NCBI RefSeq assembly: GCF_026571515.1
Contig: NW_026856982.1
Coordinates: 62,001 to 126,000 of the forward strand
Length of the DNA stretch: 64,000 bases
Origin: Ruditapes philippinarum
Lineage: Eukaryota
Direction of reading: 5' to 3'
Both the position numbers and the translations under genes were made by a program. The notes beneath the pieces were generated by a model that saw only the letters and a list, made by a program, of their open reading frames with translations, was not told the origin of the DNA and ran no database searches. Positions 27,986-53,330 of this stretch are shown here, in pieces; the first letter of the stretch is position 1; every line of letters begins with the position of its first letter.

Positions 27986-28635
27986 TAATAAAACACTTAA
28001 ATAACTCAAATGAGAAAATATTTTTATCAAGCTGATCTAGATACTGTACCTTTTCAGAGCAGCTCACAAATTAGTTTAGTAGATCTATCCAAAATTTCAG
28101 TTATCCGAATGTAAGTATTTTTTAAAATTCTTGACTGACGACTCGAATATGGAAATTTCATAGAAATATAAAAGTATATTTACAAAAACGATAACGGTCT
28201 TAAAGATTTTTCGGGTATTAGACGCAAGAAGAAAGTTATTGCTGTTTATTGTGCAATAAAGTCTGTGTCAATTTGGCGCTTTATTTTTAGGTGCGCGTAA
28301 AATTAGTACGCTGTAGTTATCATTTAACGGTTGAACACTACAAAAAGACATGACTTAAAAAAATCGGCCAAAAAGTTAATCTGAGATTAAAATAAAAAAT
28401 AAATCCTTCAGTTAATCAAATTATTATATTTTTTCTGTTGTGCTTTTTTTTTACGAGACCTTTCTAATTAAAATAATTAACAATTTGAAATTAAAATAAA
28501 GATATTGGAATATAACTTTTGAATGCTATGAGGAGGCTTCGATCGTTCTCTACAGTGAATTAATACTTGTTTGGTTTTTTTCTTGTTTAATTAAGTTGAT
28601 ATATCTCGCGTTCGTGAATAACGTGAATAATAACT

Positions 28636-31600
28636 ATGCCATATAAAAATGTGGTTGCCCAATACGAGCCTCTAGAAGACAAAGGAGAGTTTAAATTACG
28701 GAAGACGGTTTTCCTCGGCTACACGGATGTAGCGGCAGGTGGCATGTAAGTTCTTTGTTATTTTCTCACTCCACATTTGCAATCTGATAAAAACGCTTTG
28801 TAATTAAAACATCATATACAGATATTTGTTGTCCTTTTCTAAATGAAAGCGCAACATAGCTTGGAATAACATTCATTCATTCATTCATTCATTCATTCAT
28901 TCATTCATTCATTCATTCATTCATTCTTATTTATTTATTTGTTTGTTTATTTATAAAATGTTCTTTTTAGAGTTAAGTCGTGTGTCCCATGTTACTGTAC
29001 AAAATACTTCAGTCACTTTGTTGTTCGAAATACAGGGTCATGATTTTTATTCGCAACATTATTCTTTGCAAGCTAGGTGATCGTATTTGATATGAGAATG
29101 AATTTCGCGTAGTTTTTTTCAGACGAGCTCTGCTTGGCATCAACATGAAGAAAGAGTTTTTAACAATAGATATCCCGGAACTGGGTGATGTAAAATTAGC
29201 GGTAGAAAGCACGGAGAAATTAGACCCGAGGGATCAGCCATATGCACCTTTTCAAATCTGGAATCTTAAATATGAACTGGTAAGCATGAGCACGAAATAA
29301 TAAATTGTCACAACTCACCTTGCATTTCTCGTTTGTGCGTCCGTATTAATGCAGTTGAGAAAGGAATACTTTATCAAACATATAATTCCGATATCTAGAA
29401 GATCATGTTCTAATTTAAATCCAAGAAAAATACATGCAACTATAAACCGAACTGAAATGTTGATAAACTGGTGCAAAATAAACCAACAAAACCAAACCAA
29501 ACCAAACAAAAGGAAGGAACGAACGAACGAACGAAGGAACGAACGAACGAATGAAGGGTGGTTGGTTCGNNNNNNNNNNNNNNNNNNNNNNNNNNNNNNN
29601 NNNNNNNNNNNNNNNNNNNNNNNNNNNNNNNNNNNNNNNNNNNNNNNNNNNNNNNNNNNNNNNNNNNNNNNNNNNNNNNNNNNNNNNNNNNNNNNNNNNN
29701 NNNNNNNNNNNNNNNNNNNNNNNNNNNNNNNNNNNNNNNNNNNNNNNNNNNNNNNNNNNNNNNNNNNNNNNNNNNNNNNNNNNATCTGAATAAATGTTGT
29801 TTATTATAATCTTAAAGACCAGTCTACTAGTTAATACATTAAATCAAATACTGAAATGTTTCGAATGACACATTGTATAAAACTTTGGTACACTATGTAT
29901 TTTTTTAATGCATTTTAGAGTGCTGTTTTAAAATATTAATGATGATGTTTTGCTTTTAAATGGCACTTAAATCTCAAAGTGTCTTTGCAGCTAAGAAATA
30001 AATAGCCAAATATAAAATCAGTTTTTGAAGTGTCACAATTAACGTGTGTCTACATTTTAAAATAGGGCACTTGATATATTACTTTGTTTATGTTCTTACT
30101 GTGCAATAAAATCAATGCTGGTTTTAAGATTTGATTTTATAACTCGGTTCGATTTAGTAATGCCCTGTATGAATTTAAGTAAACGATTTTCCTGCTGTAA
30201 GCATGTCTCCACTTTGACAAGAATAAAACAAATTTCGCATACATGCATGTTGCCTTAAATATTTTTTTGGTATGCATGTAATATTATACTTTTAACTATT
30301 AATTAAGCTTTGTAAATTTGAGTAAGTTTCCCTATTCGGCCATTTTATAAAAACAAATCACCGTGTCCTATACATGTAGATGTGCAAGTTTAACATACAA
30401 TGCATATGATGAAAGTTATGGTTATTTTGTATGAAGATACCAAGTAAATTGTTATATTATTAGCTATAAAAAGTATATTAGCTATAACAAGTAGATCCAT
30501 TGGTAGCTGCAGGTAAAATCTTATCTTCTACATATAATACATATGAATATGTTATCAATTTTAAAACATATATATGTTTTGTTTCAGTTTTCTGTTATTC
30601 TAGTCAACACCAAACTGAAAGCAGACAAATGCCACTATGTATGCTCCAAAATAATGGATTTATGCACTCGATGGTAAGCCACTTTTTAAAACCCTTTATC
30701 TAATTAAATTTATTATTCAAGACAGTAATTTAAACACTTACAATCCACGTTAACTACAAAAGGAAGGTCAAAAGGTGCAAAAGGAGCCCTTACTGTGTTA
30801 GTTATGTGGTAAAATCACAGTAATAAATACTGCAAAGTCAGTCTATACTCGCATATAACATGATAACATTATTACTCGAATCTTATTTCTACTTTCTTAA
30901 AAATCTTAGTGAAGTTTTCTCAAGTTTCTGGAATATTCTGGCTTATCTGGTGACATTATATGCAGCTTGAACTGTAAGAATTTAAGAAAATTATAAACTA
31001 AATCAACCAATATAGACTTACAGACATATGCGTTAGACGATTTCCCCAAAGACAAGGGTACAAAGTAAAGGGACATCGTCTAATTAATACGAAAATGCTT
31101 TTAGATTTATATCAATTGTAACTTTAAATTGAAGTTATGAGTTTTAGCAATTAAAATATTTCAAAGCTACTGTTAATGTAAAATACAACAAAAGTATCAT
31201 ATTTTTTTAATGTTTACAGGTGTGTAGATAAGCTGGTTGTTCTGAGTGCACTAAGGTTAGATGTTTCCATGGATAATATTTCTGATATATATGAAACTGT
31301 CATAAATGACATGCCACGTAAGAATTATTTATATGTATATACCTGTATATGTAGTTTACTAAATTCAATCAAAGAATGCAGGGTCACCCAAGAGGCGGTG
31401 GTTACCTACTTATACCTGTACATGTTTTATCAAGTAGAAGTTGAATGTTAATGGACAATATACATTTATTCATAATTCATTATGACTTTTCCCGCAAATG
31501 CAACAATTCAAGTTATAAAGTTGACTAGAACACACGTGTGTCTTTTCTCTTTGTGGACCACATGGATCTCCTTTATAATACGAAGAATATTACATCGTGA

Positions 31601-33067
31601 TTGGAAAATATGCATGCATTATTAAGATATGTAGCTTGAAGTTTTTTAACAACTCCATCATGGAGATAATAAAGCACAAAAAGCATTACAAATGTTATCC
31701 TTGTTCTTAATTAAGCAATTCAAAACAAAAACAATAAGTATATTTTAGTTATCTGCGCTGATATGTGAATATTTCAGTTACAAAATGTCCGGAACTTTCC
31801 GGGGATACCAGGATGAATGACCCATTTCTGAGTACATTAATACAAATGGTACAAGTTGAATACATACCGACATGCTTCCTGTTAATACCTGCCCACAGGG
31901 CGTGTCTTGGTGAAGCACGTGAAACTGACGGCAGTAAACAGGTATTCAAAGTTAATGATAAAAATTTAGACACTTCAATTTAAATTAGAATAATGTATTT
32001 AATAGATAAACAATTATAAGTACTGCCGTTTTTTATAAAAATTAAAGTTAAAGCTTCATGAAATGAGAAATTGCTTAATGAAGTAGAAACGATGCGTAGT
32101 AAGCAATAATGTAACACTTATAGATCTATTCTAATGGCCTAGGTTTGTCATCTGTATTGCTATTAGATACTAGGTTAATATACGCAAGTTTCAGGTGAAC
32201 TTCATAAAAAATATTGTAAATTCCTGTAAGTCAATTATAAGAATGAAGAATTTGCAGATTTTTTTAAATTATTTTATTTCAGGTGATTAAGACATTTCAA
32301 CAAACCATCAATACAGCAACGAAAATAAGCTTTGATCAGGAGTTTAGTAATAACTTGGTTAGTATACATGTATATACGAGTACTTGCATGTCATATGAAT
32401 TTAGTGTATACTTTACAAATTCATTTTAATTTGTTGATCAAAATTCATTTTGACGCTACTGTATGTGATTAAGGAATATAAGTACATGTATATAGGTTAT
32501 AGTGATTTCATTAATGCTGACTAACAAAAACTAACAAACTTAGGATTGAAATTATGCAGGATTGAAATTATGCATCGTGCGACTGTGGTACGCTGATTGA
32601 ACGGGGAAATATTAAATGATATTTTGCACCGATTAATTAAATTTACAAAAGAATTTGAAAAATGGAAATATCTCATTTGACAAAATATATTCAAAATTAA
32701 AACAAATTTCCAATAAAAAAATATAGTGTTTCGTCAAAAGGTGCACGTTGTGACAAAAAATCAAAAATGTATAATTTATGCTGTTCTTGTTATTCAACAC
32801 CTTTTCAGATATACATGTATAGTATGATTGTTTATTCCTTACCATGCTAAATATCTTATATGAATTTGTCTGTCTTTCAATCATAACCATTCATCACTTT
32901 AGGAGGAAACAATTTACCAAGAAACTAGTGAACAGTGAAGACCCTGATCAGACAGCACAAATGAGTTATTTAAATTTTCAATATTTCTAAACATTTTTTT
33001 TCTTCAGATATACAAGGGAGATAATGACCAGAAAGATTCCAACAGTGTCTCAATGATCTACTCGTGA
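28636..33067 (+). CDS. Uncharacterised 249-aa protein, candidate PAC1/PAC2-fold proteasome-associated factor with C-terminal HbYX (Ile-Tyr-Ser)
   Basis: Exons 28636..28745, 29123..29279, 30588..30673, 31220..31317, 31778..31941, 32283..32357 and 33008..33067 (750 nt). All junctions are GT-AG and phase-compatible, with no internal stop. The gene model is well supported; the family call is an inference. An extra exon inside the N gap cannot be excluded. Confidence 0.75.
28870..28926. repeat. (CATT)n microsatellite
   Basis: About 14 perfect units. Confidence 0.95.
29570..29783. other. Assembly gap (N run), preceded by a (GAAC)n microsatellite
   Basis: Run of N. Confidence 1.
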
Positions 33068-33834
33068 AGATGACCGCCATCATATTTCGTGACTTCCTTC
33101 ATGTCCTTGGCAAAGATTGGAATAATAAACTGAAAAGTCTATAATGTCTTATTGCATTGTAATGCAATTGTTAACAGTGCATTCCTTGCAGACATTTTGA
33201 GATATCAGCAAAATGTTATCATAAAATGGTCTTATTATCATAAGAGTTCCACAACTTAAAAACATATAATTTGAAAATCTTACATAATTGTAAATCAAAT
33301 GGGACAGTAAATCCCAGAAATATGAGAAAGATAAAGAAATATGTACAGTATTAAATTGAAAATAGACGTTTAGTGTGAATCTTTGCTCAATTTTCACTTG
33401 AATTAACTTGAAAGGTTTTCATTTTCCACAATAAAAAAGATTATTTTGTAAAAAGCAATGCCAGTGAATTAATGTTCAGAAATTTTGCACACATTTTAAT
33501 GATACACACCTTCACCAAATGGTATAAAAATCTTGAAAAGATATGTCCAGTCCTGTCTAGCAAAAAAAACCTCAGTGGAGTCGCTCTTATGAATTTGTAT
33601 ACAATAAATGCCATTTTTTTTTTTATCTCATATCAATAAATTTGTTAACATGAAATCTAAATGAGTATGCTGTCGTACTATGTTAATAAAATCAATATCT
33701 TGTAATCAATAAGTAATTTATTTATTTAGTATGTTAACTGTTTTTCATCTTGTCACACCATCATACTCATTTCATTATCTTATAAAGTTAAGTTAAAACA
33801 GAGTGGTTATTCCATTTTTTACACACACATATTT

Positions 33835-35649: not shown

Positions 35650-38600
35650 CTATAATCTAATTGGGTCATCACTTCTTTCCATTTTAAGTCGTTTCATCTC
35701 GTACATCAGTGAGTAGGTAGAGTTCAATAAATCGTCTGTGGCCTGTTTAAGTCCCTGGGAAGACTGGCTAAATGCTGATGTATTAGTGTGTACTGATGGC
35801 CATATCGTGTCCGTGTACTTGGCCTCGGGACGGTAAGTGGGTGCTGGCATTGGTTTACAAATTGATTGCTCCGCGGCGTCCCAGTGGTACGGGTAATTAG
35901 CTGCCAGCCTCTCTGCCTCACTCAAAGTCTGAAATAATCAAAATATTGAAAATAATTTTTTTTTTTTTAAACTTAACCCTGATTTGAATTTGGAACAGTC
36001 CAATCATATCTTAGGGTTTTCAACATCAAAATACAGAAAATAAGCTACCATCAGTATAAAGCCTGGTCAAACTGCAGCATTGATTTTGATCCTAAACATT
36101 TAAAATTTCCAGATCAAAATATTATTTCAATGACTTTGTTACTATTTATATAACTGTGTTTTATATAACTGTGTTTTATATAACTGTGTTATATATAACT
36201 GTGTTTTATATAACTGTGTTTTATATAACTGTGTTTTATATAACTGTGTTATATATAACTGTGTTTTATATAACTGTGTTATATATAACTGTGTTTTATA
36301 TAACTGTGTTTTATATAACTGTGTTTTATATAACTGTGTTTTATATAACTGTGTTTTATATAACTGTGTTTTATATAACTGTGTTATATATAACTGTGTT
36401 ATATATAACTGTGTTTTATATAACTGTGTTTTATATAACTGTGTTTTATATAACTGTGTTATATATAACTGTGTTATATATAACTGTGTTTTATATAACT
36501 GTGTTTTATATAACTGTGTTTTATATAACTGTGTTTTAATTACATAAAAAATATTTGGAATACTCCTGAATTTCATAATAATATTTAACTAACATAACAT
36601 CACTATTTTTTGTACATAAAACCTACAAAAAAAATATCTTTAATTCAGTTTCCAGTTTATTTTTATTTTTTCCTCTTAGCTTCCACACATGAAGTAAGTT
36701 CCATGAAACATACCAAATAATACAAATATTTCCTTGATAAAACAAAGCAAAACTTATTTTTTTCCTTTTTATAATTATGTATAACAATCAACATTGGTAC
36801 ATTATAATTGACATGATGAGTGCAAAATGTCTTACAGTTTTCATGGAGGATTTGATCCCAGTGGTGGCATCTCTCAGAGCTATGTTAGAGGAAGCTGGTA
36901 CCATGGCAGGCTGTGTCGTGTTCCAACCCTTCAAACAATGCTGAAAAAATATGATAACTTATAATTAATATAAATATTTTCAAAGTTAATATTCATCCTT
37001 ACATAGAGATCCATATTTTGTATTTCGATGCAACCCATCAGAAAAGTATTGCTTAATCTTCTTGCAAGAACTCAGTAACTTGTAATCTTACAATACATTT
37101 ATATCATTTTCAATACATTTTGTTTGTTCTGAATTTGTATTACAAACAGGTAATGTACTAGTCAATTATTTAGTTTATCCAAATTTATTTTAGTTTCTGT
37201 CTGAATCTATAAACTTATTGAAACACTCTAAAATCCCTGACTAGGACCCACCAATAGTAAGCAACAAGTGTAAAGTTTCTTGCTGATAGAAACAAGGCCT
37301 TGCCCCCGACAGGGTTTTAACCTATACCACAAGCAATCCTTAGATGACTAGTCAGTTGTAATCACATCAAAGGACAGTAAGATGGTAAAATCCTCAATCC
37401 ATTCAAGGTTAACACACACTAACATACACACTTGAGAACACCTACCTGTGACAAAGCCATGGAATCTGTGCCATCAAAACTATTTCTACGATGAGGTTTA
37501 ACTCTGTGTGGAGGCATTAACGTAGATCTTGGTATACTCACTCTGAAATAACAACAGTTCTGATTACTAAATTATGAAGCTGTTTTGGTTAAGACAGTAA
37601 GACAAATTTTATTTATAGTCCGTTGTGGTTAACAGTACAAAACATAAGCTTTAAGCTTGTATCAGACATGAAAATGTTCTAGTATGAATAATGCAAAGTG
37701 TGATATCATTTAAGTATGAATAATGCAAAGTGTGATATCACTCTAGTACAAATAATGCAAAGTGTGATATTATTTAAGTATGAATAATGCAAAAAAGTGT
37801 GATATCACTTAAGTATGAATAATGAAAAAAAAAGTGATATCATTTAAGTATGAATAATGCAAAGTGTGATATCATTAAAGTATGAATAATGCAAAGTGTG
37901 ATATCACTCTAGTACAAATAATGCAAAGTGTGATATCATTTAAGTATGAATAATGCAAAAAAGTGTGATATCACTTAAGTATGAATAATGCAAAAAAAAG
38001 TGATATCATTTAAGTATGAATAATACAAAGTGTGATATCACTCTAGTACAAATAATGCAAAGTGTGATATCACTTAAGTATAAAAAATGCAAAAAATGTG
38101 ATATCATTTAAGTATGAATAATGCAAAGTGTGATACCATTCAAGCTTTGCCTGGTATTTATATAAAAAAATTTTAATATGATAATAATCAGATTTTAGTT
38201 ACCGCACAAATCTTGGTTCATCATAGGTTGGTTCCTTCTCTTTCACATGACTGGTATCTGGCTCCTGATAATCATAATCGGCAAAAAGACTTTTCTTAAT
38301 TGGCTCGGGAAACAATCTGTTGTTAACAACGTACGGCTTCACCTCTATAAATATCAAATATAAAACTGTTTGTAAAATCTATTTTCATTGAATGACTGTA
38401 ATGTCTATTCCATTGGATGACTTTTCATGTACATATCAAAAATGCAAAGCTGCAGTTAATCTAGAAATTATTTTTCATTTTCCTCAAAAATAAAGGACTT
38501 GTGTGTTATTATAGATTAGTTAAAAAGATTTTGTGACAGGTATGGCCAAATGCTACAAAACCCCTACCTTGGTTCTAATGTTAAATAAACTTCATTAATA

Positions 38601-51289: not shown

Positions 51290-51360
51290 CATCCGCCATT
51301 GGAGTTTACATCAACGACGCTTTCTGATTGGTTCGATAGATCTCGCAAGATCTCACGTAC
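51290..51360. promoter_or_regulatory. Candidate bidirectional promoter core for XXYLT1 and the MIIP-like gene
   Basis: CCGCCATT (YY1-like), GATTGG (reverse CCAAT box) and TCTCGCAAGA (one mismatch to TCTCGCGAGA) cluster 30-95 bp upstream of the XXYLT1 ATG. Confidence 0.4.
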
Positions 51361-51385
51361 CGTGTTCCGTAAGAACAGTAAGATC

Positions 51386-53330
51386 ATGGAAGTTGTACAG
51401 ATACTACAAAATCGTGTAAAACGATCTAAAATTTTACAATTGCTCGTGGTTTTAATTGCCACTTTGGCAATATATTCGTTTTATAAACTTGGAAGCACTC
51501 CAAAGATTTCGGGTTTGAATACAAGTTATCATGAGAGAGACAAACATGTTGTGCAAAACCAAAAACAAGTTAAAGAAACTCTACTTTCAGTTTCGGATTC
51601 AGCTGTAAACAAAGTTGTGAAAGACGAAGATGATCACCCTATCGATGTAATGATAACTTTTACCAAAGCAGAAAACAATAACAATCTTCAAGTCAAGTTT
51701 AGAATGACTGTCATGTCGCTATTCAAATTTGCTAGCTCTAAAATTAATCTTTACATACTTGGAGATGTGAAAAGTGAGGAAATTGCCAAAGATATCCTTT
51801 CAGAAGTTGCTGATAAACAAAAATATAATGTAAGTATTCTTAATGATAATGAGTGTGAATCTGGTATGGTATAAACATGCAGCATTGCATTGGTAACATG
51901 CCAGAGTGGCCATATTTTTGTAGTATTAAAATGGTAGTACTTTAATCCTGTGACCACTCCAAAATTTGGAGTCCAAATGTAAATTTTACCATGTTCAAGA
52001 TAAGTGTTGATTGGATTAAAATGGTCTTAATGGCAGCATTATAGTCTTAATTCTGGCATAGTATTACGTAGCTAAAGAGACTTCAGCGAACAGGTTTTAT
52101 AGTACTGCTAGACCTGTCGCACAACGTCAAAATAAAAGCGACATATAAAGTTATGGAAGCCAGAACTACGTATTACGTACAGTTTCTACTGTACCATCAT
52201 TGAATGATATACATGTAACTTGATTTGAAAATAGTATTCCATATGAATCAAGGGAATATAATAATAAAGGAATTTTTCAAAAGGGTAAAAAAACTTGATT
52301 GGATAACTATGGTACATGGAAGAGGCTATCAATTGGGACAGCCTTTCTAGCTGATATAAGTCAGCTGCTTTTATGTCATGGTTCTGGCGAAGAATGTGCT
52401 TTTGGCATTTCAGCAGAAAAATATAGCATTTATAGGGGGAAAATACCTACATGTATTTTAGACTTTGGGAAACATCCTTTATTTGGCTGTAAAATACAGG
52501 AAAAAAAATCACTTCTGTAAAAACAGGCCATACTATGGAATGGATTATACTGATAGATAAAAAGCGACTCTGACATCTTAGAAATGAATTATTGATAATA
52601 TAATTTTTCTAAATGCAAGTTAACATTTTTATCTATCTTTCAGGTCTTGCATTTAGACATAGACACTTTAGTTAAAGAAGTCCACGAGATAGTATCAGAG
52701 ATGCAGAAATATTTCAGCTACAAACCAGGGGCGTATTACAGCGATTCCTTGTTCTTCATGTCACTTGTCATTCATAAAGTTCTACCTGACATGCATAAAG
52801 TGATCATGTTGGATTGTGATTTAAAATTTAATGCAGACATCAAAGAATTGTTCAACCGGTTTGAATTATTTACTGACACTAACATAATGGGAATAGCTAG
52901 AGATGCACAACCTGTTTATAGACACAATTTTCATATGTACATAAACAAAAACAAAGGGACAAGAGTTGGTGCCCCTCCGCCTGACGGTCTAACTGGTTTC
53001 AACAGTGGCGTATTATTACTAGACCTTGATAAGATGAGAAAATCTGAAGTTTATAACTCACTTTTATCTGCTGAGTCTATCAAACTTCTCACTGAAAAAT
53101 TCCTGTTCAAGGGCCATCTTGGTGATCAAGATTTTTACTCATTGATCTCATTGGAACACGAGGAATTGTTCCATGTGTTACCGTGTACTTGGAATAGACA
53201 GTTATGCACATGGTGGCGTGATCATGGTTATGCTGAAGTATTTGATCAGTATTTTAAATGTGAAGGTCATATCAATATATACCACGGCAACTGTAACACT
53301 GCAATACCAAAACTTGATTGGGAATCTTAG
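51386..53330 (+). CDS. XXYLT1: Xyloside xylosyltransferase 1 (GT8, type II membrane protein), 376 aa
   Basis: Exons 51386..51829 and 52644..53330. N-terminal transmembrane helix, DxD motif (LDCD), QPVYRH, GFNSGVLLLDL, FKGHLGDQDF, LPCTWNRQLCTWW, IYHGNCNT. Confidence 0.95.

What the first reader, a model, noticed from the sequence alone, without database searches (positions are those of the whole stretch)
28636..33067. Uncharacterised gene for a PAC1/PAC2-like protein ending in an HbYX motif: candidate extra 20S proteasome chaperone or gate regulator
Seen: seven phase-compatible exons, mostly missed by the ORF track, give MPYKNVVAQYEPLEDKGEFKLRKTVFLGYTDVAAGGIRALLGINMKKEFLTIDIPELGDVKLAVESTEKLDPRDQPYAPFQIWNLKYELFSVILVNTKLKADKCHYVCSKIMDLCTRWCVDKLVVLSALRLDVSMDNISDIYETVINDMPLTKCPELSGDTRMNDPFLSTLIQMVQVEYIPTCFLLIPAHRACLGEARETDGSKQVIKTFQQTINTATKISFDQEFSNNLIYKGDNDQKDSNSVSMIYS*. 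The last exon is a polar linker followed by M-I-Y-S-stop. Established: a C-terminal hydrophobic-Tyr-X motif docks into 20S alpha-ring pockets in PAN/Rpt2,3,5, Blm10/PA200, PI31, Pba1/PAC1 and archaeal PbaA/PbaB. Inference: the strand/helix pattern (VFLGY-helix; FQIW/FSVILV hairpin; helix; DKLVVLSA; helix DPFLSTLIQMV; IPTCFLLIP; helix) and ~250-aa size fit the PAC1/PAC2 fold. However, I do not see the N-terminal ATFFGEV of animal PSMG1 or the SVGNVGQL of PSMG2, so this may be a third paralogous family.
Basis: partly seen in the sequence, partly recalled or inferred. Interest (0 to 1): 0.8.

Follow-up and report, generated by a model that had tools for sequence, protein, structure and literature searches.

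The report
Third PAC-type proteasome chaperone-like gene in clam
This Manila clam gene is real and expressed, and it encodes a protein with the predicted shape of the PAC1/PAC2 chaperones that help build the proteasome core, plus a conserved C-terminal docking motif. It exists alongside the clam's ordinary PAC1 and PAC2 genes and may correspond to the extra chaperone PBAC5 known from plants, but its function is untested.

Summary
Seven GT..AG, phase-compatible exons (28636-33067, +) encode 249 aa ending M-I-Y-S-stop. The N gap lies in intron 2, and spliced RNA contigs of a public run show all six junctions, including a direct exon 2 to exon 3 join. Every exon matches the RefSeq protein 'uncharacterized protein LOC132748359' of Ruditapes philippinarum, so the model is already annotated but unnamed.

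An AlphaFold model (pLDDT 83.7) matches human PAC2, archaeal PbaA/PbaB, yeast precursor chaperone chains (chain P; Pba1-Pba2 complex chain O) and human PAC1 at Z 13-19. Nucleoside phosphorylases score Z 11.6 or less. The clam genome has separate canonical PSMG1 and PSMG2 genes on other contigs.

Relatives occur in bivalves, abalone, annelids and a nemertean. The penultimate Tyr is kept in 16 of 17 sequences (Phe in one), always behind Ile or Met, on a variable acidic linker.

No Pfam model reaches threshold. The best sub-threshold hits go to plant DUF7894 and to PAC2. Arabidopsis PBAC5 is a published third HbYX chaperone that binds PAC1-PAC2, reported to have metazoan homologues, so the concept is not new. 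I rate this a new member of a known kind. Proteasome binding is inferred, not shown.

The parts
28534..28635 (+). 5' untranslated part of exon 1 (minimum extent)
   Evidence: An X1 RNA contig covers 28534-28745 and is then spliced to 29123 (table 8). A 14-nt loose end before 28534 suggests either a further upstream exon or allelic divergence.
28636..28745 (+). Exon 1 coding part: start codon, disordered N-terminus, first strand (TVFLGY)
   Evidence: ATG at 28636 and GT donor at 28746. Joint 28745>29123 seen in RNA contig.
29123..29279 (+). Exon 2
   Evidence: AG acceptor and GT donor, 157 nt. The RNA contig continues from 29279 into the first 14 nt of exon 3 (table 7).
29570..29783 (.). Assembly gap (N) inside intron 2, not in coding sequence
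   Evidence: Exon 2 joins exon 3 directly in RNA contigs, and P0023 has no extra residues at position 89/90.
30588..30673 (+). Exon 3
   Evidence: Joint to 31220 seen in RNA contig.
31220..31317 (+). Exon 4
   Evidence: Reciprocal overhangs at 31317 and 31778 join it to exon 5 (table 7).
31778..31941 (+). Exon 5, the most conserved part (helix DPFLSTLIQMVQ, strand PTCFLLI, PAHR loop)
   Evidence: Used as the query that recovered the family. Single copy in the genome.
32283..32357 (+). Exon 6 (C-terminal helix of the core)
   Evidence: Joints 31941>32283 and 32357>33008 seen in RNA contigs.
33008..33067 (+). Exon 7: polar/acidic linker, tail and TGA stop
   Evidence: Model residues 236-249 have pLDDT below 50, so they are predicted flexible.
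33056..33064 (+). Codons for Ile-Tyr-Ser, the C-terminal Hb-Y-X motif
   Evidence: Counted from the C-terminus in 17 relatives: position -2 is Tyr in 16 and Phe in 1, position -3 is Ile or Met in all 17, position -1 is variable, and the linker at -6 to -16 is variable.

Best explanation
The gene encodes a third PAC-type protein of the PAC2 superfamily fold, alongside the clam's canonical PSMG1 and PSMG2. It has a compact alpha/beta core (about residues 18-235) followed by a flexible, roughly 15-residue acidic tether ending in Ser-Met-Ile-Tyr-Ser.

The most likely mechanism is that the tail's Hb-Tyr-X motif and free carboxylate dock into a pocket between two alpha subunits of the 20S proteasome. 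PAC1/Pba1, archaeal PbaA/PbaB and plant PBAC5 dock this way. The protein would then act as an accessory alpha-ring assembly chaperone, possibly together with PAC1-PAC2 as described for Arabidopsis PBAC5.

Shown here: the gene model, its expression, the predicted fold, the separate PSMG1 and PSMG2 genes, and conservation of the tail. Inferred: proteasome binding, partnership with PAC1-PAC2, and equivalence to PBAC5.
For: Fold. The AlphaFold model has pLDDT 83.7 and pTM 0.82. Foldseek's top hits are all PAC2-superfamily chaperones, E 3e-8 to 1e-5. VIA-align over 48,161 chains gives 3gaa Z 17.9, human PAC2 (8qyj_J) 17.4, PbaA 17.4, PbaB 15.4, chain 7ls6_P of a yeast proteasome precursor 14.9 and chain 4g4s_O of the yeast Pba1-Pba2 complex 12.6, against 11.3 or less for nucleoside phosphorylases. 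The second look gives human PAC2 up to 18.9 and human PAC1 13.3-14.2. The ESM Atlas's own model gives TM 0.70 to archaeal PAC2-family proteins, 0.67 to plant PAC1 and 0.65 to DUF7894, and 26 of the 30 nearest clusters by features are PAC2.

Third gene. PF16094 hits only contig C14176 and PF09754 only contig C10139. Exons there match human PAC1 (E 1.6e-6) and PAC2 (E 1.6e-10). The window gene is single copy.

Tail. Tyr at -2 in 16 of 17 relatives and Ile or Met at -3 in all 17, after a variable linker, across Mollusca, Annelida and Nemertea.

Precedent. PBAC5 has an HbYX motif, forms a trimer with PAC1-PAC2 and binds between alpha4 and alpha5, with homologues reported in fungi and metazoans (PMC9105311).

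Sequence hints. Collinear sub-threshold hits to plant DUF7894 in 6 of 17 members (best E 7e-4) and to PAC2 in 4 of 17.
Against: There is no experimental evidence of proteasome binding. No Pfam family reaches its curated threshold: DUF7894 best 19.4 bits against 27, PAC2 best 15.3 against 25.8. The family profile finds nothing in the PDB by sequence. hhalign against the clam's own PSMG1 and PSMG2 exons is not significant.

That DUF7894 is the PBAC5 family could not be verified with these tools, and the primary PBAC5 paper is not held. Three raw RNA-seq runs showed no exonic coverage, so expression may be low or restricted to certain tissues. Several polar residues are conserved (D31, R38, Q81, N96, C104-H105, E143, D165, H190, D201), which could point to a different activity.
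Confidence: 0.6

Rival explanations
1. The protein binds the 20S proteasome through its tail but does not act in assembly. Instead it acts on mature core particles as a gate regulator, cap or activator, as archaeal PbaB does, or as PAC1-PAC2 is reported to do on sperm proteasomes.
For: It has the same fold and tail as PbaB (Z 15.4). HbYX tails also open or cap mature 20S in Rpt subunits and Blm10/PA200 (PMC9105311). A 2026 preprint listed reports PAC1-PAC2 on mature sperm proteasomes. Expression looks restricted, since three RNA runs showed no exonic reads.
Against: The closest published analogue with separate PAC1 and PAC2 partners, PBAC5, acts in alpha-ring assembly. Nothing here distinguishes assembly from regulation.
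Confidence: 0.2
2. It is a PAC-fold protein with a role outside the proteasome, for example an enzyme or a binding protein of the wider phosphorylase/hydrolase-like fold. The terminal motif would then serve a different partner.
For: The same fold class includes nucleoside phosphorylases, MTAN, peptidyl-tRNA hydrolase, hydrogenase maturation proteases and pyroglutamyl peptidase, at Z 7-11.6. Conserved polar residues include C104-H105 and H190. No sequence family passes threshold.
Against: There is a clear Z step between the proteasome chaperones (12.6-18.9) and the enzymes (11.6 or less). A motif conserved at a fixed distance from the free C-terminus on a disordered acidic tether is the hallmark of 20S alpha-pocket binders. 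The sub-threshold sequence hits go to PAC2 and DUF7894, not to enzymes.
Confidence: 0.12
3. It is simply the clam's divergent PSMG1 (PAC1) orthologue, as the UniRef name of the scallop member ('Proteasome assembly chaperone 1') implies.
For: The UniRef name of P0033. In the Atlas, 14% of the family's own cluster carry PF16094 and 11% carry PF10450. PAC1 also ends in HbYX.
Against: The clam genome has a separate gene on C14176 that matches PF16094 exon by exon (45.1, 30.3, 26 and 21.1 bits) and matches human PAC1 at E 1.6e-6. The window gene gets no PF16094 hit. The model is structurally closer to PAC2 (Z 17-19) than to PAC1 (Z 13-14).
Confidence: 0.03

Closest known systems
[quoted passage not shown] 2020, as summarised in PMC9105311)
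   Same: Both are an extra chaperone encoded alongside separate PAC1 and PAC2 genes, and both carry a C-terminal HbYX motif. Homologues of PBAC5 are reported in scattered metazoans. The best sub-threshold Pfam hits of the clam family go to the plant family DUF7894 (about 242 aa, the same size, collinear).
   Different: Homology was not demonstrated here. The DUF7894 hits stay below threshold, and I could not verify that DUF7894 is PBAC5. Binding to PAC1 and to the alpha4-alpha5 pocket is known only for the plant protein.
Human PSMG2 / PAC2 (PF09754; chains 8qyj_J, 8tm4_d, 8yix_g)
   Same: It is the best structural match: Z 17.4-18.9, rmsd 3.0-3.3 A over about 200 residues, with similar length.
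   Different: Sequence identity is only 11-12% and the Pfam score is below threshold. The canonical PAC2 N-terminal motif, present in the clam's own PSMG2 exon (LQPAVSVGNVAQL), is absent. The clam has its own PSMG2 on another contig. The window protein has a conserved HbYX tail.
Human PSMG1 / PAC1 (PF16094) and the yeast Pba1-Pba2 complex chain 4g4s_O
   Same: Same fold (Z 13.0-14.2) and a C-terminal HbYX on a flexible tail. The review states that this motif is conserved in all eukaryotic PAC1/Pba1 homologues.
   Different: There is no PF16094 match. The protein lacks the roughly 60-residue N-terminal extension of PAC1, since the alignment starts at PAC1 residue 64-65. The canonical clam PSMG1 lies on contig C14176.
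Archaeal PbaA / PbaB and Thermoplasma 3gaa (PAC2 family)
   Same: Single-domain PAC2 fold of about 240 aa (Z 15.4-18.5).
   Different: The archaeal proteins form homo-oligomers and act without PAC1/PAC2 partners. Sequence identity is about 10%.

Membership tests
PAC2 superfamily (fold level: PAC1, PAC2, Pba1/2, PbaA/B) | Three-layer alpha/beta PAC2-type fold covering the whole core | tested here: met
   Z 12.6-18.9 over 163-210 residues to PAC2, PbaA, PbaB, PAC1 and yeast precursor chaperone chains, against 11.6 or less for the next fold class. Atlas TM 0.65-0.70.
Pfam PAC2 (PF09754) | HMM score above the gathering threshold (25.8 bits) | tested here: not met
   Best score 15.3 bits (E 0.017). 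Only 4 of 17 members hit, and the hits are collinear. The genome-wide PF09754 search hits only C10139.
PSMG1 / PAC1 (PF16094) | HMM match, or orthology to PSMG1 | tested here: not met
   No member hits PF16094 at E up to 10. The genome's PF16094 hits are all on C14176, and that locus matches human PAC1.
PSMG1 / PAC1 (PF16094) | C-terminal HbYX motif | tested here: met
   The protein ends M-I-Y-S, and the motif is conserved in relatives.
PBAC5 / DUF7894 (PF25428) | HMM score above the gathering threshold (27 bits) | tested here: inconclusive
   6 of 17 members give collinear hits (protein about 150-230 against profile 143-221 of 242). The best is 19.4 bits, E 7e-4, which is below threshold. No better DUF7894 locus exists elsewhere in the genome; only two noise hits were found.
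PBAC5 / DUF7894 (PF25428) | Coexists with separate PAC1 and PAC2 genes and carries an HbYX motif | tested here: met
   Feature definition taken from PMC9105311.
PBAC5 / DUF7894 (PF25428) | Binds PAC1 to form a PAC1-PAC2-PBAC5 trimer and docks at the alpha4-alpha5 pocket | not testable with these tools
   This needs biochemistry or multimer modelling. Only monomer prediction was available.
HbYX-motif 20S binders | Hydrophobic-Tyr-any residue at the extreme C-terminus of a flexible tail | tested here: met
   Position -3 is I or M in 17 of 17, position -2 is Y in 16 of 17 (F in 1), and position -1 is variable. Tail pLDDT is below 50.
HbYX-motif 20S binders | Tail-dependent binding to an inter-alpha-subunit pocket | not testable with these tools

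The most novel reading that the evidence does not exclude
The family is an ancient third branch of eukaryotic PAC-type chaperones, in the PBAC5 lineage. It would be retained in lophotrochozoans (molluscs, annelids, nemerteans) and plants but lost from vertebrates and the standard invertebrate models. In these animals alpha-ring assembly would then use a PAC1-PAC2-X trimer that occupies a third alpha pocket.
Probability: 0.35. Interest if true: 0.65.

Novelty: new member of a known kind. Interest (0 to 1): 0.5.

Why it matters
[quoted passage not shown] A conserved sixth, PAC-shaped, HbYX-tailed protein in three lophotrochozoan phyla would show that the plant PBAC5-type addition is not confined to plants. 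It would also give an animal system for asking what a third alpha-pocket binder does. At present these proteins are labelled 'uncharacterized', or in one case mislabelled 'PAC1', and no Pfam family covers them. Giving the family a name and a testable function therefore has practical annotation value.

Tried and rejected
- Pfam on the six single exons: no hits.
- PDB sequence search with exons 2 and 5, with orthologue P0003 and with the family profile: nothing meaningful.
- Word search with exon 5: only two ORF fragments from near relatives, because of the length filter.
- hhalign of the family profile against the clam's own PSMG2 and PSMG1 exons: not significant. A 10-residue match (DPFLSTL against PPFLRSL, probability under 1%) is taken as chance.
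- Genome-wide DUF7894 search: two hits, one containing a stop codon and one low-complexity, both rejected as noise.
- Raw RNA runs X10, X12 and X16: no exonic coverage. X12 laid no reads at all, and X10 and X16 matched mostly repeats in introns, so they neither support nor refute the model.
- Atlas search restricted to unnamed clusters: nothing useful.
- The primary PBAC5 paper (PMC7657472 / 10.1242/jcs.249862) is not held. Literature searches for DUF7894, PSMG5, PAC5 and Pba5 gave nothing relevant.
- The divergent-PSMG1 reading was considered and rejected (see rivals).
Whole-protein steps used database proteins returned by the tools.
Full report
**1. Observation**

The region is a spliced animal gene on the + strand. 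I placed seven exons at 28636-28745, 29123-29279, 30588-30673, 31220-31317, 31778-31941, 32283-32357 and 33008-33067. Every internal boundary is AG...GT, the phases are compatible, and the total is 750 nt. The three split codons read ATA (I37), TGG (W118) and CTT (L151). The last exon ends ...S-V-S-M-I-Y-S-TGA.

The N run at 29570-29783 lies inside intron 2 (29280-30587). I laid four public runs of the same species on 28450-33400. The contigs of run X1 are spliced, so they are RNA. They show joints 28745>29123, 30673>31220, 31941>32283 and 32357>33008, all GT..AG.

The other two junctions appear as reciprocal overhangs. After 29279 the contig continues with the first 14 nt of exon 3, and before 30587 two contigs carry the last 15 nt of exon 2. 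The same pattern holds for exon 4 to exon 5. In that transcript, therefore, exon 2 joins exon 3 directly and no exon is hidden in the gap. The caveat is that the exon 2-3 evidence rests on 14-15-nt overhangs.

Three raw RNA-seq runs gave no exonic coverage. X12 laid nothing, and X10 and X16 matched mostly intronic repeats. Expression in those samples is low or absent. Nine contig-type runs from six studies hold a small share of the words of the searched stretch 30588-33300, most plausibly its exons.

**3. Identity of the model**

- Single exons gave nothing in Pfam or in the PDB by sequence.
- The word search with exon 5 found only two ORF fragments.
- The exhaustive HMMER search with exon 5 returned full-length proteins of 237-249 aa.
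- A word search with one of them, P0003, returned P0023: RefSeq 'uncharacterized protein LOC132748359 [Ruditapes philippinarum]', 249 aa.

All seven exon translations are found in P0023 in order, with exactly one residue between the pieces at the split codons. The window is therefore Manila clam, and the gene model already exists in RefSeq without a name. All whole-protein work below uses P0023 and other database proteins.

**4. Family**

Relatives are annotated 'uncharacterized' or 'hypothetical' in these taxa:

- Bivalves: Mercenaria, Mactra, Dreissena (three loci), Mya, Mizuhopecten, Pecten, Solemya, Mytilus
- Gastropods: Haliotis (two species)
- Annelids: Ridgeia, Owenia
- Nemertean: Lineus

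The only functional name is UniRef's 'Proteasome assembly chaperone 1' for the scallop protein. Identity to the clam protein falls to 34-44% outside heterodont bivalves, over the full length. The gene is single copy in the clam genome.

**5. Not PSMG1 or PSMG2**

A six-frame search of the whole 1.41-Gb assembly with PF16094 (PAC1) hits four exons on contig C14176 and nothing in the window. PF09754 (PAC2) hits one exon on contig C10139.

The C14176 exon matches human PAC1 (8qyj_I, E 1.6e-6). The C10139 exon, which reads LQPAVSVGNVAQL..., matches human PAC2 (8qyj_J, E 1.6e-10). The clam thus has canonical PSMG1 and PSMG2 genes plus this third gene.

**6. Fold**

AlphaFold2 on a 17-sequence alignment gave pLDDT 83.7 and pTM 0.82.

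- Foldseek against the PDB: every top hit is a PAC2-superfamily proteasome chaperone, namely PbaA, Thermoplasma 3gaa, human PAC2 and PAC1 in 20S assembly intermediates, PbaB, yeast precursor-complex chains, and actinobacterial PAC2-family proteins. E-values run from 3e-8 to 1e-5.
- An aligner that does not depend on Foldseek, run over 48,161 representative chains: 3gaa Z 17.9, human PAC2 17.4, PbaA 17.4, PbaB 15.4, 7ls6_P (a chain of a yeast proteasome precursor) 14.9 and 4g4s_O (a chain of the yeast Pba1-Pba2 complex) 12.6. Scores then step down to nucleoside phosphorylases and MTAN at 11.3 or less.
- The second look: human PAC2 up to Z 18.9 (rmsd 3.0-3.3 A over about 203 residues) and human PAC1 at 13.3-14.2.
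- The ESM Atlas's own model agrees, with TM 0.70 to archaeal PAC2-family proteins, 0.67 to plant PAC1 and 0.65 to DUF7894. By features, 26 of the 30 nearest clusters are PAC2.

I take the fold assignment as established at the level of prediction.

**7. Sequence-level affiliation is weak**

No Pfam model passes its threshold. Six of 17 members give collinear sub-threshold hits to PF25428 (DUF7894), a family whose Atlas clusters are commonest in Streptophyta. The best is 19.4 bits, E 7e-4, aligning protein 151-230 to profile 143-220 of 242. Four of 17 give collinear hits to PAC2 (best E 0.017). None hits PAC1.

The family profile finds nothing in the PDB by sequence. hhalign against the clam's own PSMG1 and PSMG2 exons is not significant. 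A genome-wide DUF7894 search found only two noise hits elsewhere, so no other clam locus is a better DUF7894 counterpart.

**8. The tail**

Counted from the free C-terminus in 17 full-length relatives:

| Position | Residue |
|---|---|
| -1 | variable |
| -2 | Tyr in 16, Phe in 1 (Mytilus) |
| -3 | Ile or Met in all 17 |
| -4 | mostly Met or Leu |
| -5 | mostly Ser or Thr |
| -6 to -16 | variable, polar and acidic |

The distance from the last structured element to the end is nearly constant. A motif fixed relative to the carboxy-terminus, on a disordered tether, conserved across three phyla, fits the HbYX docking motif of 20S alpha-pocket binders.

**9. What is known**

A review (PMC9105311) makes three relevant statements. 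All eukaryotic PAC1/Pba1 homologues carry a C-terminal HbYX. Yeast Pba1 and Pba2 tails bind the alpha5-alpha6 and alpha6-alpha7 pockets. [quoted passage not shown]

The primary paper (Marshall et al. 2020, J Cell Sci) is not held. I could not check whether molluscs were among its metazoan relatives, nor whether DUF7894 is the PBAC5 family. That link is my inference from size, taxon and the Atlas neighbours. I found no paper naming an animal counterpart.

**10. Mechanism and verdict**

The best-supported reading is a third PAC-type chaperone-like protein whose HbYX tail docks into an inter-alpha-subunit pocket of the 20S core or its precursors. It probably acts in alpha-ring assembly alongside PAC1-PAC2, as PBAC5 does in plants (confidence 0.6).

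The rivals are:

- a regulator or cap of mature 20S (0.2)
- a non-proteasomal role for a PAC-fold protein, suggested by conserved polar residues including C104-H105 and H190 (0.12)
- a divergent PSMG1 (0.03, contradicted)

The fold, the separate PSMG1 and PSMG2 genes, the tail conservation and the expression are shown. Proteasome binding, the partner and the PBAC5 equivalence are inferred.

Its novelty is limited by the RefSeq annotation and by the PBAC5 precedent. I rate it a new member of a known kind, interest 0.5.

**11. Limits**

- The family's range outside Lophotrochozoa is untested, because the available searches depend on a 54-aa query or on shared 5-mers.

Noticed in passing
window 51299-53330 (+): Two long open frames downstream. 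The second (52647-53330) matches glycosyltransferase family 8 (PF01501, E 3e-11). The first looks like its N-terminal part with a membrane anchor. This is probably a xylosyltransferase-type neighbour gene, unrelated to the finding.
   Followed up: partly
alignment A2, junction of exons 2 and 3 (P0023 residues 89/90): Three relatives (P0029, Haliotis P0035, Solemya P0037) carry 4-13 extra residues exactly at this intron position. Splice-site shifts or a micro-exon therefore occur here in other species. In the clam the N gap sits in this same intron, so a rare alternative isoform cannot be excluded.
   Followed up: no
database relatives P0025, P0026, P0030: Some annotated relatives lose the HbYX tail or skip an exon. 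The Mercenaria and one Dreissena model end in unrelated sequence, as if read into an intron. The Mactra model lacks the 25 residues of exon 6. These are likely isoform or annotation artefacts. Dreissena polymorpha has three separate loci of the family.
   Followed up: no
window 33068-33200: The X1 RNA contig departs from the genome 6 nt after the stop codon and runs on for 134 letters that are similar but not identical, so the 3' UTR is polymorphic or alternatively processed. An AATAAA stands at 33124-33129.
   Followed up: no
window 28870-28930 and 29475-29569: Microsatellites sit in introns 1 and 2: a (CATT)n run, and AAACC / GAAC-type repeats that abut the assembly gap. The repeats probably caused the gap.
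   Followed up: no
window 36142-36576: A long tandem repeat reads as open frames on both strands (KTQLY / ITVFY units). This is non-coding satellite-like DNA.
   Followed up: no
G000 contig C14176:30887-42226 (-), loci L001-L004: This is the canonical clam PSMG1 gene, spread over at least 11 kb. I did not locate its last exon, and so did not see its own HbYX tail.
   Followed up: partly
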